From Anthoceros angustus (lineage: Eukaryota > Plantae > Anthocerotophyta), in NCBI GenBank assembly GCA_010909165.1, contig MU008191.1, positions 62,001 to 126,000 on the forward strand: a DNA stretch of 64,000 nt, written 5' to 3'. The notes beneath the pieces are model-generated. The model had not been told where the DNA came from and searched no databases. It saw nothing but the letters and a program-made list of their open reading frames with translations. Of this stretch, positions 17,544 to 26,577 are shown one piece after another (within the stretch, counting starts at the first letter, position 1; every line of letters begins with the position of its first letter). Both the position numbers and the translations under genes were made by a program.

Positions 17544-18257
17544 CCTTCCTGCCTTCTACAAACCCGCAAAGCCGACTGCACATGCTGCGGGCAACAACAA
17601 CACTGCCAGGTCGGTGAACCAAGCCTAAAAATTGTCACTTCACTCTCCCCCTTGATGTGAGACACAAACCTCATCCGCTGCTTCGATTGCACTCTCATCC
17701 AGCATGCGTCTCGCAATGCTCTTTCACGATCCCTCATCTCATGGCACTTGTTCTGCCATGCCAGGCCGGTGCAGACAAACATGCAGGAGCTGCTTCCGGC
17801 GCCATCACATGAGCTCTACAGTCCAGCTCCGGCTCCAGCTCCAGCTCCTGCGAGCCTGGTCCACCGGCACGGCATCTTCTCGACTGCTGCCTAACAGGAG
17901 TTTGGGAGCCGATTAGCGCAGGATTAAGCGAGAGAGTTCAACCGCCTTGCTGGTGAACCGTGACCGAGGAACGAACGAATGAACTGCAACGGACACCGGT
18001 AAAACAGACGCCACCCACCTGCGATTCGAACCTCACGAGTTGATAAGAAGCAAAGCGCTCTCCAGCTACCTTGCTGCCTGTCGGACGACAGCGGGTGGAG
18101 GTAGCATCTCCGGCATCCGGTGACTTGGCATCTCTGCTTCTGCCTTTGCTTCCTTCTTCTTCCATCGTCCTGTTGCCGGGGACATGCATGCATTCCAGGC
18201 CGGCCCGGCGTTGATGTGAGCCTGCGCTGCCCGTCCCGGCGCTGAAGCTTGCCGGCC

Positions 18258-21200
18258 ATGGCGCTGTGCCTGTGCCCGTCGTCGGCCGTGCTGGTGCAGC
18301 ACCGTCAGACCGTGGGCTTGGAGGCCTCGCATTCCGGGAGGCGCGGGGGCGAGGCTGCCGGCTGGGGGGGCGGTCTCGCCAGGCGGGAGCGGGTCGGCCT
18401 GAGGTGGGCTCGGCCGCGGGGGACCGGGCCACTGCCTGCAGCGCGCGGGAATGGCAGGGGTGTCGTGCGGGTGAGGTGGCCTTGTCGAGTCAGTCTCGTT
18501 TGCTGCGTTTTGGATTGTGGGTTTGGGATGTTTGAATTCTGGATCCCGGGGTTGGAGGGGAGGGATCTGATGCCGGGACGATGTTGCCAGTGTTCCGCAG
18601 CTGCGTCCGGCTCTGCGCCTTGGAAGGTGATGATATCCGGGGCCCCGGCGTCTGGGAAGGGCACTCAATGCGAGTTTATCAAGCAGCAGGTGAGGGAGTT
18701 GGGTGTGGCGTTGGATTTGTTGTGGTGGGTTTGTGGAATTCTGCAGTTCCGTGTGCACGGACCGATTGTGGATTTTGTTGTGGCAGTTCAATCTGGTGCA
18801 TATCGCGGCAGGTGATCTGCTGCGTGCGGAGTTGGCAGCAGGGACTGATGTCGGGAAAGAGGCCGAGAAGTACATGAACCTGGGCCAGTTGGTGCCGAAC
18901 GATATTGTGGTCACGGTATGCGTCTCGGGTGGAAGTCAGTGAATACATGCTCTTTTGGTTCAGTGACCTAACGGCAAGGAATTCCGTGTCACGTTCGTCG
19001 GTCTGCAGATGGTGAAGGACAGGTTGTCACGGCAGGATGCAGTTGCTCAAGGATGGTTGCTTGATGGATATCCTAGAAGCTTGTCGCAGGCTGAGGCTCT
19101 TGAAAAGCTGAACATCAGGCCCCAGCTTTTCATATTGCTGGAGGTGAGATGACTGGTGAAAGGCTACGTGAATCGTCGTCTGTCTGCACAGCTGGCAAGT
19201 CTCTGCTTGTCTTTGTACAAGCTGATTCCAAGTGTACGTGGTTGTTAGGTTCCAGATGAAATTCTTGTTGAGCGAGTTGTAGGCAGGAGGATAGACCCTG
19301 TGACTGGGAAGATCTACCACCTCAAGTTCAGTCCCCCTGAAAATGAAGAGATTGCAGCTCGACTTACCCAACGCTCTGATGACACAGAGGAAAAGGTGCG
19401 ATTGTGTTTTGCAAAACAGACTGTAACCTGTCACCATCCTCAAGAAATCCGTTATCAGCTTTTTTCCTGGTACCAAATATTTGGGCAGGTCCAACTGCGG
19501 TTGCAAACCCACCACAAAAATGTTGCTGCGGTGCTGTCAGTCTACAAGGACGTAATCAGAAGGGTAAGATTATCTTTCTGCACATGAACTGAGGGTTGGC
19601 AGCTATCTGCTGTGCAAAGTTGTCACAAAGATAGGGATCGCATATTTCTGCAGTCATGTGTTCAAGGAATCGAATCATGTTTGCCATTCCTTGCTGTTGT
19701 TTGTGTGTTTTCTTACTCTGGACTGTTTGAACCCTTAGGTTAAAGGGAACCGCAATAGCAAATTGGTGTTTAAAGACATTGAAAAACTGATGTCAAAGAA
19801 AAAGCGTCGTTAACTGCAGACTTTTCCCACTTGTGTTCTTCGTACTTCAAGTTTTGGCAGCTGATTTCTGCTTATGTGGAGTTTGTCTGATTTATTAGGT
19901 CAATGGGAATCGTCCGAAGCCAGAGGTTTCTGCGGAAATCTATAATCTTCTGTCAGAACTGCAAGAGAAAAATGAGGAGGTCGGTGATTCCGTGGTTGCT
20001 GGTGGTCGCTAAATTTGCATGGCCGAAGTTTTCTGATATTGTGGGGCTGCAGTATAGAAGCTGTGAGTGGTCTTTAATTCAAAGAGCTACGTCTGTACGG
20101 TAGCTTTAGGTGGGATTTTAGTAGTTCAATCTAATTAGTCGACTTAAACAATAATTACTCAGCTTTGTTAGATAGTCCTACAGCAGAGAACCATTTTTTA
20201 CAACATTCATGCCAATCCCTTGGGACGAACGATGTCCCGGTTTGCATTCTGCATCTTAGCAGCTGTTTGGTGTGTTGTCTGAAACTAGGGTTTTTATGAC
20301 CACGTCCTGGCATTACCATGGGCACACCATGTCCACGGAGTGTACTCTTAACTCAAGCATCTGCTTAGCCATCGCATTTCTGGAGCAAAAAAATGCTCGA
20401 TGCACTAGATCTACAAGCCCAGGTCAATCCTTCCCCTCACGGCTAGAGTTTGCAAGCTCCCAACTTAGGGATAGCTTTCATCGAAACGAGCAGGATTCAA
20501 CTCACGAGGAGCCTCGTTGTACATTAGCTGAAGTCCCTGCCCTTGGGCTTGTCCTTGAATTAAACTTTGCCGTCAACTGAATTGGTCGGCCCACCTCTTC
20601 AGGGTGTCAAGCTTACATGTAGAAATATGCTAGGAAACAACACCTCCTTGCAGTCAGCTTGAATCTGACAGCCTATCTTGGCACCAGAGTCTGAGACTTA
20701 ACTGTGCACTTCATGAAGAAACTAGCTTTGTTCGTGGTCCTGTGGGGACCCGACAGAAGTTTTGATTGGTTCATGTGCAAAAACGTTTTGTTCAGCCAGA
20801 CATCGACAATGTTCCCAGGCTCCCTCCACTGGAAAAGGTACATGGTATTTGCTGTTGTGGGCTTACTGAAGAGGTGGTTGTTCCATTTCCGGTTCCAACC
20901 AGTTGTTACACTTTGGCAGAATTGGAGGGGGATACCTACTAAGCTGAACAGCATTCCTCATTCAAGAGAGATACGTGCTTACTTCTACAAAGACGTCTGT
21001 GAAGCTGCAAAGAGAGCTGTGGAAGATGGACTTCACAAACTCAGGGTATGCTATGTTATCCTGGATGTTATTTCTTCACTGCGTAGCACCGCAATGGATG
21101 CATGTGGTGCAAGTGTGGGAATTCCATTAGGAGGGCTGTTCGACTAATCCTGCTATGTTGAATGGACCAGATTCAGATGACCATCCCAGAGCTGAACCCT

Positions 21201-22771
21201 GAGATGGTACGCTATGATTCTTATGCTGCCTAACCTTGTTGTGGGAATATGTGATTTTGTGGGAACTTAAAAAGTTTTGTGCAGGATGTCTACAGAATTG
21301 GCACACTCCTGGAACTTATACGGGAGCTTGCCTTCACTTTTGCGAATGACGGAAAACGCGTCCGGGTCTAAGATCTTCTCCCCACCCAAATAGCTGACAG
21401 GCCAGTCGTGCTCACAGGATTTATTCCCCATCTGGAGCAAACGCCATCTAGGACTGAAACAATGTTAGCTTGTGGTTCAGGTTTGTGTCCAGGGTTCAAT
21501 GGGAGAGGGCATATTTGCAGGTATGCCCTTGCAACTAGCTGGGACAAGAAGAATGTTGGAGGCCATGGACTGGGGGGAGTATGGTGCAAAGGGAGCGTTT
21601 ATCAACATTGGATCAGTAGGTAGTGCACCCTTGCGCTATTGCAGCAGTCGAGCTTCCTGGTTCTTAGGCAACAGTGTAATCAGATTTAAAACCTTGCAGG
21701 TGCAAAGGAAGTCACTGATCAGGATGACATGTTCATACTAATGGCACCCCAGAATGCAACTGGTAACTGTATCATTGACGTAAGTGTGTCACACCTGATG
21801 TCGACCAATCTGCTGCCAGTAGTGGATTTGATATATGTTTGATGGATTCTACGTCTGAGGTCTTACCCGTTCACATATATTGTTGCAATAGGATCTGCAA
21901 GCAATGGTGACTGCAGCAGGCGAAAGGCCTGTTATTATAGTAAACCCAAGGCTCAAGGTATCATCCCGCTCTATAGAATTGTCCTGGTTGCAAATTTATT
22001 TTGTATTATTGATCTCACTGTTCCTCCTTGTGGATCGGTTCTCGTTTGCAGGACTTGCCCGGTGCTGGAGGAGTTATGCAAGTGAGTACCAGGAACTTGT
22101 ACTTGCTTTGGTTGATTGTAATTGGAAATTATGTTAGCTGACCAAAAAGTTACGTCGTGCTTCAGGTCAGAGGAAGGCAAGAACGATTGGATTTCGTTGC
22201 CTCTTTCTTCACTTGTTACAACTTTCGGCTCCTTTATCTGTCAGGAACTCAGTACCCAATTCTGGGAGCCTTGCGGTATTTCTATCTTCCCAAATGCTGC
22301 TTTTCGTGACGCAAACGAGTTCCAGTCAATCCTTCTGGCTTACAGCGCTGCCTCCTGGATCTGACTTATAAGTATTTCAGAATGGCCTACCCACACTCGT
22401 ACGAAGTTTATCAAAGGTTGGACACAGAGCAAGGAAGTGAGAAATACGCGTTACTGGGCACCTTTCCTGAAGAACCAAGCGGATCCGAAATTGGGGATGC
22501 TTTCGAAGGGCGAACAAGGTACTAAACAGCTTCTCCAGTTACTCGGGTTGCATATCTGCTTGCTTTAGCTGCCAATCTGGCCTGTCCGCAATGAATATTA
22601 TCTCTTGGGTGTTGTCTCACAGGACCAAAGCTACTCCTACGGGCTTCTGGTAAGTCTTGTGACCGGTGATATCATTTAAGCTTCAGTCTATATGTGTCGG
22701 GGGTATAAAATGGTTGGCTTACATATCATATCCTGATCATCCGCAGGGGTTTCCTGAGCAGCATTTTTTGA
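18258..22771 (+). CDS. AMK5: Plastid adenylate kinase with C-terminal DUF1995 domain (AMK5-like), multi-exon
   Basis: Transit-peptide-like N-terminus; P-loop [29 protein letters not shown] and [14 protein letters not shown]; then [68 protein letters not shown] and the terminal WGFLSSIF* (TGA 22769-22771). Confidence 0.93.
19739..19813 (+). CDS. Putative alternative terminal exon 6a of the adenylate kinase gene ([24 protein letters not shown])
   Basis: Acceptor CCCTTAG ends at 19738 in phase 0, matching the exon 5 donor at 19564. It is homologous to the downstream exon 19899-19979 ([18 protein letters not shown]..) and ends in TAA. Confidence 0.7.
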   Translation, partial: VKGNRNSKLVFKDIEKLMSKKKRR

Positions 22772-24282
22772 GAAAAGCTTGTTTGCTTGCAACAGCAATC
22801 CACACCACCTTCGTGGCGCCCTCAATTGGTGGTGCCGTCATAACAGCAGGAGGTGAAAGGATTCGTAGTCGATGCGTGGATCTGTGCGCTCATTGCCCTG
22901 TGCTTCTTGGTACAGCAGCAAATCTGTTCAGATGCTACTGTGTAATACGCCAGAGTTAATCATCCTTCATCCCAAAGGGTGTGTTAACAGCGTCTTATGG
23001 AGTTCCGGCTCCTGCTCCTTCCTTGCCGTGTGCTTGTATTGCACCGAGTTCGCTCGCTTGGATCCCTACGAGATAACAGGAATTGCGTCACCCTTATATC
23101 TTGGCGTAGGATGCAAGGTGATGTTCCCCAGCTATCAGCTATGGTGACAGTTGCTCGCACCCAGGCCGCATTCCTGCTTCCCGCGCCTGGTCTCCACACC
23201 GCTTCCACGTCCGCTTCGTCTTGCTGCGCTCTCCGGCGATAAATGATAGCTGCAGGTGGCAGGAGGAGAGCGTTGCTGCAGGCCAGGGCGTTCAGCGAGA
23301 CAGCACCGTCGGTGAGGGATCACATGCCCGCGCCCGGCCCTGCTTCAGCCTGGGAGACGAGTCTCCGCATTAACTCAGTCTGTCAGGAACTCAGTACCCA
23401 ATTCTGGAGCCTTGCGGTATTTCTATCTTCCCAAATGCTGCTTTTCGTGACGCAAACGAGTTCCAGTCAATCCTTCTGGCTTACAGCGCTGCCTCCTGGA
23501 TCTGACTTATAAGTATTTCAGAATGGCCTACCCACACTCGTACGAAGTTTATCAAAGGTTGGACACAGAGCAAGGAAGTGAGAAATACGCGTTACTGGGC
23601 ACCTTTCCTGAAGAACCAAGCGGATCCGAAATTGGGGATGCTTTCGAAGGGCGAACAAGGTACTAAACAGCTTCTCCAGTTACTCGGGTTGCATATCTGC
23701 TTGCTTTAGCTGCCAATCTGGCCTGTCCGCAATGAATATTATCTCTTGGGTGTTGTCTCACAGGACCAAAGCTACTCCTACGGGCTTCTGGTAAGTCTTG
23801 TGACCGGTGATATCATTTAAGCTTCAGTCTATATGTGTCGGGGGTATAAAATGGTTGGCTTACATATCATATCCTGATCATCCGCAGGGGTTTCCTGAGC
23901 AGCATTTTTTGAGAAAAGCTTGTTTGCTTGCAACAGCAATCCACACCACCTTCGTGGCGCCCTCAATTGGTGGTGCCGTCATAACAGCAGGAGGTGAAAG
24001 GATTCGTAGTCGATGCGTGGATCTGTGCGCTCATTGCCCTGTGCTTCTTGGTACAGCAGCAAATCTGTTCAGATGCTACTGTGTAATACGCCAGAGTTAA
24101 TCATCCTTCATCCCAAAGGGTGTGTTAACAGCGTCTTATGGAGTTCCGGCTCCTGCTCCTTCCTTGCCGTGTGCTTGTATTGCACCGAGTTCGCTCGCTT
24201 GGATCCCTACGAGATAACAGGAATTGCGTCACCCTTATATCTTGGCGTAGGATGCAAGGTGATGTTCCCCCAGCTATCAGCT

Positions 24283-26577
<2,295 letters not shown>

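What the first reader, a model, noticed from the sequence alone, without database searches (positions are those of the whole stretch)
19564..20919. Tandemly duplicated alternative exon could switch one gene between a short adenylate kinase and an AK-DUF1995 fusion
Seen: after the exon 5 donor (phase 0, 19564) there are two phase-0 acceptors leading to homologous exons. Exon 6a (19739-19813, [24 protein letters not shown]) terminates. Exon 6b (19899-19979, [27 protein letters not shown]) splices on to NWRGIP and DUF1995. They share V-x-GNR-x4-V-x3-I-x2-L, the final strand-helix of the AK fold. Known: Arabidopsis encodes short plastid AK (AMK2) and AK-DUF1995 (AMK5) as separate genes. Inference: here both forms come from one locus through alternative exon use and polyadenylation. 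Unlike the artefactual duplications, these two exons are strongly diverged yet both are in frame.
Basis: partly seen in the sequence, partly recalled or inferred. Interest (0 to 1): 0.78.

Follow-up and report, generated by a model that had tools for sequence, protein, structure and literature searches.

The report
Spare duplicate exon in AMK5 gene
A hornwort-like plant's chloroplast adenylate kinase-DUF1995 gene holds a diverged spare copy of its last kinase exon with its own stop codon, but RNA contigs from four species never splice into it, and kinase-only messages seem to arise by reading on into the next intron, an outcome already reported for Arabidopsis.

Summary
Exon 6a (19739-19813) and exon 6b (19899-19979) are two in-phase copies of the last strand-helix of the adenylate kinase fold. 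Both follow an AG acceptor.

- **Not chance:** a profile built from 100 outside homologues scores 6b at 39.4 bits and 6a at 31.8. The next best of 127,888 window positions scores 14.7.
- **Selection on 6a:** the codon-position pattern (13/19, 13/19, 6/19 identical) and low divergence among four species suggest 6a has been kept under selection.
- **Lineage-specific:** Selaginella, Marchantia, moss-like and angiosperm loci have a single copy.
spliced RNA contigs from the same species and three relatives join 19563 only to 19899. No listed joint enters 19739.
- **What the RNA shows instead:** the two introns flanking 6b, and no others, are covered unspliced. Reading past the 6b donor reaches a stop after ten codons (20010-20012), which gives a complete kinase without DUF1995.
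- **Already known outcome:** Arabidopsis AMK5 (At5g35170) loses DUF1995 through a proximal poly(A) site (Duc et al. 2013).

Use of 6a remains unproven. It could still be minor or condition-specific. Interest is moderate. This scan had noted similar unused upstream exon duplicates elsewhere in this genome.

The parts
18258..18470 (+). Coding exon 1: start codon and presumed transit peptide
   Evidence: ORF from ATG. The joint 18470>18591 is present in all four runs.
18591..19395 (+). Coding exons 2-5 of the adenylate kinase domain (18591-18689 P-loop, 18787-18915, 19009-19143, 19249-19395 lid)
   Evidence: Pfam ADK and ADK_lid hits exon by exon. All joints are GT..AG in four runs.
19489..19563 (+).
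   Evidence: The joint 19563>19899 is present in four runs.
19564..19898 (+). Intron 6 (335 nt), selectively retained in part of the RNA. It holds 6a.
   Evidence: Unspliced contigs cover 19536-19927 in X16 (depth 30.7, against 112 for the spliced joint), 19537-19927 in X20 (18.9 against 19.5), 19588-19927 in X7 (100 against 173.5) and 19578-19827 in X1 (3.9 against 79.2).
19739..19813 (+). Exon 6a: a diverged upstream duplicate of the last kinase exon. It encodes 24 codons plus TAA and has its own AG acceptor. No spliced entry was seen.
   Evidence: No joint into 19739.
19899..19979 (+). Exon 6b: the constitutive last kinase exon, orthologous to the single exon of other plants
   Evidence: Joined to exon 6 in four runs. 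39.4 bits against the profile. Orthologous exons found in Selaginella and Marchantia.
19980..20012 (+). Read-through extension past the 6b donor: ten codons, then TAA at 20010-20012
   Evidence: Sequence. Contigs run from 6b into the intron: X20 19898-20249, X7 19950-20274, X1 19950-20823, X16 19950-20821.
19980..20795 (+). Intron 7 (816 nt), the longest in the gene. It is partly retained or read through and is a candidate site of intronic polyadenylation.
   Evidence: depths and contig ends. The analogy is with Arabidopsis AMK5.
20796..20837 (+).
   Evidence: Sequence. Loose ends behind 19979 and before 20918 in X7, X16 and X20 carry its homologue.
20920..22771 (+). DUF1995 exons, from NWRGIP to the stop near 22769-22771
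   Evidence: Joints. Exon-by-exon identity of 64-93% to orthologues that carry PF09353 (with domain lists).

Best explanation
This is the orthologue, in a hornwort-like plant, of the plastid adenylate kinase-DUF1995 gene AMK5.

In this lineage the last kinase exon and its acceptor were duplicated in tandem long ago. The downstream copy, 6b, is the working exon. The exon-6 donor is joined to it in every spliced RNA contig seen.

The upstream copy, 6a, sits inside intron 6. It still encodes a family-typical final strand-helix with its own stop, and it seems to be under constraint. It is not the main route to a short kinase.

Kinase-only messages arise because the two introns flanking 6b are often left unspliced. 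Reading through the 6b donor adds ten codons and stops. This gives a complete kinase without DUF1995, the same outcome as the proximal poly(A) site of Arabidopsis AMK5. Exon 6a is at most a minor or condition-specific alternative terminal coding exon.

Shown here: the exon anatomy, the homology, the lineage restriction, the junctions and the unspliced coverage.

Inferred: selection on 6a, polyadenylation inside intron 7, and translation of the read-through form.
For: - **Gene identity:** Pfam ADK and ADK_lid on the exons. Exon-wise identity of 64-93% to AK-DUF1995 orthologues.
- **Junctions:** the joint 19563>19899 is present in X1, X7, X16 and X20, and no listed joint enters 19739.
- **Selective retention:** only introns 6 and 7 are covered by unspliced contigs. 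Relative depths are 5-50% for intron 6. For the first part of intron 7 they range from 17% to above the depth of the kinase contig.
- **Stop after read-through:** an in-frame stop lies ten codons after the 6b donor.
- **Precedent:** in Arabidopsis AMK5, proximal poly(A) use removes DUF1995. The proximal share is 8% in wild type and 19-27% in fpa-7 (PMC3814327).
- **6a is family-like and probably constrained:** it scores 31.8 bits. Its codon-position identity to 6b is 13/19, 13/19 and 6/19. A model with neutral 6a reaches a joint probability of at most 0.01-0.06, against 0.1-0.6 when both copies are constrained.
- **Conservation among relatives:** the 250 nt around 6a differ by at most 2.4-5.2%. 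Intron 7 differs by 6.8-10.6% and a neighbouring 59-nt patch by 13.6%.
- **Single copy elsewhere:**
Against: - All RNA evidence is from assembled contigs. They cannot show 3' ends, strand or rare isoforms, and depth is one mean value per contig.
- No poly(A) tail was seen in intron 7.
- In X1, the same species, intron 7 is covered evenly to its end (one contig, 19950-20823). That fits plain retention as well as polyadenylation.
- Intron-6 retention gives a truncated, probably useless protein, with a stop at 19585-19587. Part of the unspliced signal may therefore be unproductive or nuclear RNA.
- The constraint on 6a is not resolved to codons in the relatives, because the table of differences was cut off before 6a.
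- If 6a is truly under protein-level selection, it must be translated somewhere.
Confidence: 0.55

Rival explanations
1. Exon 6a is a genuine alternative terminal coding exon. Splicing 19563>19739, followed by the 6a stop and nearby polyadenylation, yields a short plastid kinase. Splicing to 6b yields the fusion. Use of 6a is confined to tissues, stages or conditions absent from the four runs, or it lies below what contigs keep.
For: - 6a has an intact ORF that starts exactly at an AG acceptor in phase 0 and ends just after the helix.
- It keeps ancestral family residues that 6b has lost, namely the VF pair and the DIEKL-type helix.
- The codon-position pattern favours protein-level constraint.
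- The surrounding block is conserved in relatives.
- The X1 contig over 6a ends 14 nt after its stop, at 19827.
Against: - No joint into 19739 in four runs of four species.
- Contigs covering 6a continue unspliced upstream of its acceptor. In the relatives they run unbroken on to 6b.
- Only 85 nt separate the 6a stop from the 6b acceptor, and no clear poly(A) signal lies there.
- No A-tail was seen at 19827.
Confidence: 0.25
2. Exon 6a is a dead relic of an old tandem exon duplication and is never translated. The conservation of its surroundings reflects elements that control retention or splicing of intron 6, for example the hairpin over the exon-6 donor, rather than coding function.
For: - No spliced use was seen.
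- Intron 6 is selectively retained in all four species, so it probably carries regulatory sequence.
- A 10-bp stem covers the donor (19556-19579, -10.2 kcal/mol).
- Other notes of this scan describe upstream exon duplicates in this genome that RNA never uses (unchecked leads).
Against: - A neutral relic old enough to have randomised third codon positions should also have lost the first and second positions, its frame or its stop-free reading. The neutral model fits at most at 0.01-0.06.
- A regulatory RNA element has no reason to keep a 31.8-bit match to a protein profile.
- Intron 6 shows no global fold signal (z -0.74).
Confidence: 0.18
3. The resemblance between 6a and 6b is chance, or the duplicate is an assembly artefact like the near-identical 1.14-kb repeat at the gene's 3' end.
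For: The same window holds a 100%-identical tandem repeat with a period of about 1141 nt, 22265-23384 against 23406-24529.
Against: - 6a and 6b are only 56% identical in DNA.
- 6a is the second-best match to the family profile among 127,888 positions, 17 bits ahead of the third.
- It is present in independent RNA contigs of four species.
Confidence: 0.02

Closest known systems
Arabidopsis thaliana AMK5 (At5g35170): alternative polyadenylation that removes DUF1995 (Duc et al. 2013, PLoS Genet, PMC3814327, legend of Fig. S4G-J)
   Same: - The gene family and domain order are the same (plastid adenylate kinase followed by DUF1995).
- One gene yields a kinase-only and a fusion mRNA by alternative 3' processing at the domain boundary.
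- Here, contigs read from the last kinase exon into the following intron, and an in-frame stop follows quickly.
- A Brassicaceae-like contig (L054) has a stop two codons after the homologous donor.
   Different: - The Arabidopsis case is documented by RNA gel blots and is regulated by FPA. Here only contigs are available and no poly(A) ends were seen.
- The text held does not say which Arabidopsis intron carries the proximal site.
- The Brassicaceae-like contig L054 has no second copy of the last kinase exon. The hornwort-like gene has one, 6a.
Arabidopsis AMK2 (At5g47840), the stand-alone short plastid adenylate kinase (Lange et al. 2008, as cited in PMC5853452)
   Same: A product ending in 6a, or in 6b plus read-through, would have the architecture of AMK2: transit peptide plus kinase domain. 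The AMK2-type last exons begin at the same V-[ND]-G position.
   Different: AMK2 is a separate gene. Whether this genome has its own AMK2 orthologue could not be tested, because only the window is readable and no same-genus protein is in the databases.
Tandemly duplicated exons used as mutually exclusive or alternative terminal exons
   Same: Two homologous, same-phase exons in tandem, each with its own acceptor. The upstream copy carries a stop.
   Different: The defining evidence, transcripts using each copy, is met only for 6b.

Membership tests
AMK5-type plastid adenylate kinase-DUF1995 fusion gene | Adenylate kinase domain with P-loop and lid | tested here: met
   Pfam ADK on exons 2-4 (E from 8e-4 to 4e-12) and ADK_lid on exon 5, below the curated cut-off because single exons were scanned. 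In addition, 1278 library hits to exon 5.
AMK5-type plastid adenylate kinase-DUF1995 fusion gene | DUF1995 (PF09353) domain downstream in the same transcript | tested here: met
   Single exons are too short for Pfam. They are 64-93% identical to the matching parts of orthologues whose precomputed domains include PF09353. Contig ends in X7 and X16 link 6b to the 42-nt exon, and in X7, X16 and X20 link that exon to the NWRGIP exon.
AMK5-type plastid adenylate kinase-DUF1995 fusion gene | Shared intron position (phase 0) before the last kinase exon | tested here: met
   The same position is found in Selaginella (L001, intron of 64 nt) and in Marchantia (L003).
AMK5-type plastid adenylate kinase-DUF1995 fusion gene | Plastid targeting | not tested
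   There is a 71-codon Arg/Gly/Ala-rich N-terminal exon, but no predictor is available here.
Alternative terminal or mutually exclusive exon pair | Two homologous exons in the same phase, each with splice signals | tested here: met
Alternative terminal or mutually exclusive exon pair | Transcripts that splice into each copy | tested here: not met
   Only 19563>19899 is seen. No listed joint enters 19739 in four runs. Contig data cannot exclude rare use.
Alternative terminal or mutually exclusive exon pair | Poly(A) site after the stop-bearing copy | not testable with these tools
   Contigs show no RNA ends. The X1 contig stops at 19827 without an A-tail.
Alternative terminal or mutually exclusive exon pair | Both copies kept by selection in relatives | tested here: inconclusive
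   The block around 6a differs by at most 2.4-5.2% in three relatives, and the codon-position pattern favours constraint. No codon-level alignment of the relatives was obtainable.
Intronic polyadenylation or read-through switch as in Arabidopsis AMK5 | RNA continuing from the last kinase exon into the next intron, with an early in-frame stop | tested here: met
   Contigs cover 19898-20249 (X20), 19950-20274 (X7), 19950-20823 (X1) and 19950-20821 (X16). The stop is at 20010-20012.
Intronic polyadenylation or read-through switch as in Arabidopsis AMK5 | Cleavage and poly(A) ends inside the intron | tested here: inconclusive
   Contigs of X20 and X7 end at 20249 and 20274, and depth halves beyond that point in X7. 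Contigs cannot show RNA ends, and X1 and X16 cover the whole intron.

The most novel reading that the evidence does not exclude
Exon 6a is a selectively maintained, conditionally used terminal exon. This hornwort lineage would then have hard-wired the kinase-only form of AMK5 into a duplicated exon with its own stop, alongside the older read-through route. One gene would cover the roles that seed plants divide between AMK2 and AMK5.
Probability: 0.3. Interest if true: 0.55.

Novelty: new variant of a known kind. Interest (0 to 1): 0.4.

Why it matters
AMK5 is a conserved streptophyte fusion of a plastid adenylate kinase with a domain of unknown function. Knowing when the kinase is made with or without DUF1995 bears on what DUF1995 does.

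The data here suggest that processing at the domain boundary is old. Selective non-splicing of the flanking introns is seen in four hornwort-like species, and proximal polyadenylation is known in Arabidopsis.

This lineage also keeps a spare, stop-bearing copy of the last kinase exon. If that copy is used, it would be a clear example of a domain switch fixed by exon duplication, and it could be tested in a transformable hornwort. If it is not used, it joins other unused upstream exon duplicates noted in this genome.

Tried and rejected
- **Family and structure searches on 6a and 6b alone:** Pfam found nothing, because the exons are too short. The PDB sequence search with the 24-aa and 27-aa peptides found nothing at E up to 10.
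- **Search for same-genus proteins:** I used the stop-free stretch 18258-18812, scored on exon 1, to look for products ending in 6a. There were 70 candidates and none was significant. The length window of that query also excluded full-length proteins.
- **Selaginella query:** it returned no same-genus protein either.
- **Loci that could not be fetched:** the Psilotum short kinase P0040, Sphagnum P0280 and Diphasiastrum P0279 are not on record. The Adiantum P0216 gene is too long.
- **RNA structure in intron 6:** no global signal (z -0.74) and no Rfam family in 19400-21000.
- **Other scans:** bacterial-type promoter and terminator scans and the ORF list for the introns showed nothing relevant.
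- **Chance and artefact:** both rejected.
- **Zero-difference stretches:** I first read the table of differences as showing stretches without any difference. The table is truncated and incomplete, so only upper bounds from the per-contig counts are used.
- **Separate AMK2 orthologue:** this could not be tested.

Full report
**Observation**

The gene lies on the + strand from about 18258 to 22771.
- An exon ends at 19563 in phase 0, followed by GTAAGA.
- Exon 6a is 19739-19813. It follows a TAG acceptor and encodes 24 codons plus TAA.
- Exon 6b is 19899-19979. It also follows a TAG acceptor, encodes 27 codons and ends at a GTCGGT donor.

Pfam finds ADK on exons 2-4 and ADK_lid on exon 5. The exon before the pair is the sixth coding exon, not the fifth.

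Contigs of X7 and X16 carry its homologue as loose ends behind 19979, and contigs of X7, X16 and X20 carry it before 20918.

**Is the resemblance more than chance?**

I collected the 20-residue segment that begins the last strand-helix from outside homologues. This gave 100 distinct sequences, none from the window, and I made a position matrix from them.
- Over all six frames of the window (127,888 positions; mean -34.8, sd 9.4 bits), 6b scores 39.4 and 6a scores 31.8.
- The next best position scores 14.7.
- In a plain BLOSUM62 comparison with 6b, 6a ranks second among the non-self positions.

Exon 6a keeps family-typical residues that 6b has lost, namely the V-F pair and a DIEKL-type helix. 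Exon 6b keeps NRPK-x-EV and the LQEK-type continuation seen in orthologues. The last 15 nt before the two acceptors also resemble each other, so the duplication included the end of the intron.

**Age and constraint**

The two copies are 56% identical over the first 57 nt. By codon position the identity is 13/19, 13/19 and 6/19, so third positions are randomised.
- A model in which 6a has drifted neutrally since the duplication, while 6b stayed constrained, reaches a joint probability of at most 0.01-0.06 for this pattern.
- A model with both copies constrained reaches 0.1-0.6.

This is modest support for protein-level selection on 6a.

**Distribution**

The orthologous phase-0 intron exists in Selaginella (64 nt, no room for a second exon) and in Marchantia. 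I scanned these two loci and 80 metagenome loci that encode relatives of exon 5. The set includes moss-like, angiosperm AMK5-type and AMK2-type genomic contigs. None of the plant loci has a second copy at 15 bits or more.

The duplication is therefore lineage-specific. No same-genus protein is in the databases. The nearest orthologues are Selaginella, Sphagnum, Calypogeia and Diphasiastrum, all at similar distance. That fits the hornwort assignment made in other notes of this scan.

**RNA evidence**

One run holds half of the sampled words (X1, the same species). Runs of three related organisms hold a tenth. All four sets of contigs are spliced at GT..AG borders, so they are RNA.
- Every constitutive junction of the kinase part is present in all four runs, including 19563>19899.
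- None of the 15 listed joints enters 19739. Six joints are unlisted. Exactly six constitutive junctions of X1 are missing from the list (19979>20796, 20837>20920, 21045>21171, 21206>21285, 21368>21481 and about 21780>21892). The unlisted ones are therefore probably those. This is inference.
- Contigs that cover 6a are unspliced. In the figures below, the comparison depth is that of the spliced joint:

| Run | Contig span | Depth | Spliced joint depth |
|---|---|---|---|
| X16 | 19536-19927 | 30.7 | 112 |
| X20 | 19537-19927 | 18.9 | 19.5 |
| X7 | 19588-19927 | 100 | 173.5 |
| X1 | 19578-19827 | 3.9 | 79.2 |

- In the relatives these contigs are not broken at 19739, as they would be if a well-supported junction merged there.
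- Intron 7 is also covered:

| Run | Contig span | Depth |
|---|---|---|
| X1 | 19950-20823 | 13.4 |
| X16 | 19950-20821 | 41.3 |
| X7 | 19950-20274 | 92.4 |
| X7 | 20292-20821 | 43.6 |
| X20 | 19898-20249 | 30.9 (nothing beyond) |

- The other sixteen introns show no such coverage.

Non-splicing is therefore specific to the two introns that flank 6b, and it is shared by four species.

**Consequences for the protein**
- Retaining intron 6 stops translation after seven codons (stop at 19585-19587). The last strand-helix is then missing.
- Exon 6a lies in a different frame of the unspliced RNA, because 175 nt separate it from the donor. It can only be read after splicing.
- Reading through the 6b donor adds ten codons and stops at 20010-20012. 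This gives a complete kinase without DUF1995.

**Conservation in the relatives**

The per-contig counts give the following divergence:

| Region | Divergence |
|---|---|
| Kinase exons | 3.4-9.8% |
| Intron 7 | 6.8-10.6%, with many gaps |
| Intron 6 as a whole | 4.1-5.4% |

Eight of the differences in intron 6 lie in a 59-nt patch (19619-19677). At most 6 (X7) or 13 (X16, X20) differences remain for the 250 nt from 19678 to 19927, which hold 6a. That is at most 2.4-5.2%.

The table of single differences is cut off before 6a and is incomplete. I could not resolve codon positions, and these figures are upper bounds only.

**What is known**

Arabidopsis has AMK2 (At5g47840) and AMK5 (At5g35170) as separate plastid kinases (PMC5853452).

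Duc et al. 2013 (PMC3814327, legend of Fig. S4G-J) showed that At5g35170 has a promoter-proximal poly(A) site whose use eliminates DUF1995. The proximal share is 8% in wild type and 19-27% in fpa-7. The switch between a kinase-only and a fusion product of one gene is therefore already on record.

A Brassicaceae-like contig (L054) has a stop two codons after the donor of the homologous exon. The text held does not say which intron carries the Arabidopsis site.

**Verdict**

The route the RNA supports is read-through or polyadenylation after 6b, as in Arabidopsis, and not entry into 6a.

Exon 6a looks selected and is lineage-specific, so occasional or tissue-specific use remains a live possibility. 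I put it at about 0.25-0.3. A dead relic inside a regulated intron is the other reading, at about 0.2.

No global RNA structure or known RNA family explains the conservation. A 10-bp stem over the exon-6 donor is a lead for the retention.

**Limits**
- All RNA evidence is from contigs.
- The rest of the genome could not be searched for an AMK2 orthologue.

Noticed in passing
window 22265-24546: A near-perfect tandem repeat with a period of about 1141-1145 nt: 22265-22564 = 23406-23705, 23126-23234 = 24268-24376 and 23262-23384 = 24407-24529, all 100% identical. It duplicates the last DUF1995 exons and the 3' UTR of this gene. It is either a very recent duplication or an assembly artefact.
   Followed up: partly
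window 19556-19579: A 10-bp hairpin (-10.2 kcal/mol for 19552-19585) pairs the exon-6 donor site with the first bases of intron 6. It could favour the selective retention of this intron. No covariation test was possible.
   Followed up: partly
window 20796-20837 and 21171-21206: Two micro-exons of 42 and 36 nt in the linker and at the start of DUF1995. The 36-nt exon appears in the relatives' contigs as 33 letters lying between the two sides of a joint (table 5c).
   Followed up: partly
window 20920-23000 against 18100-19563: In the three relatives the contig of the DUF1995 part is deeper than the contig of the kinase part: 404.8 against 173.5 in X7, 169.1 against 131.9 in X16, and 28.9 against 22.5 in X20. 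In X20 no contig links 6b to the 42-nt exon. This could be 3' bias or a separate downstream transcript start. Contigs cannot tell.
   Followed up: no
P0040 (Psilotum nudum transcript, 308 aa) against window 19899-20000: The tail of this short fern kinase aligns at 50% identity to 6b plus the first seven read-through codons (source). This may hint that stand-alone short plastid kinases descend from a read-through form of the fusion gene, or it may be chance over a few residues.
   Followed up: no
L003 (Marchantia), L046 (moss-like), window intron 7: The gap between the last kinase exon and the first DUF1995 exon is long in several lineages: about 2.2 kb in Marchantia, 2.4 kb in L046 and 0.94 kb here, where other introns are about 100 nt. 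It is short in Selaginella. This leaves room for a conserved intronic processing site.
   Followed up: partly
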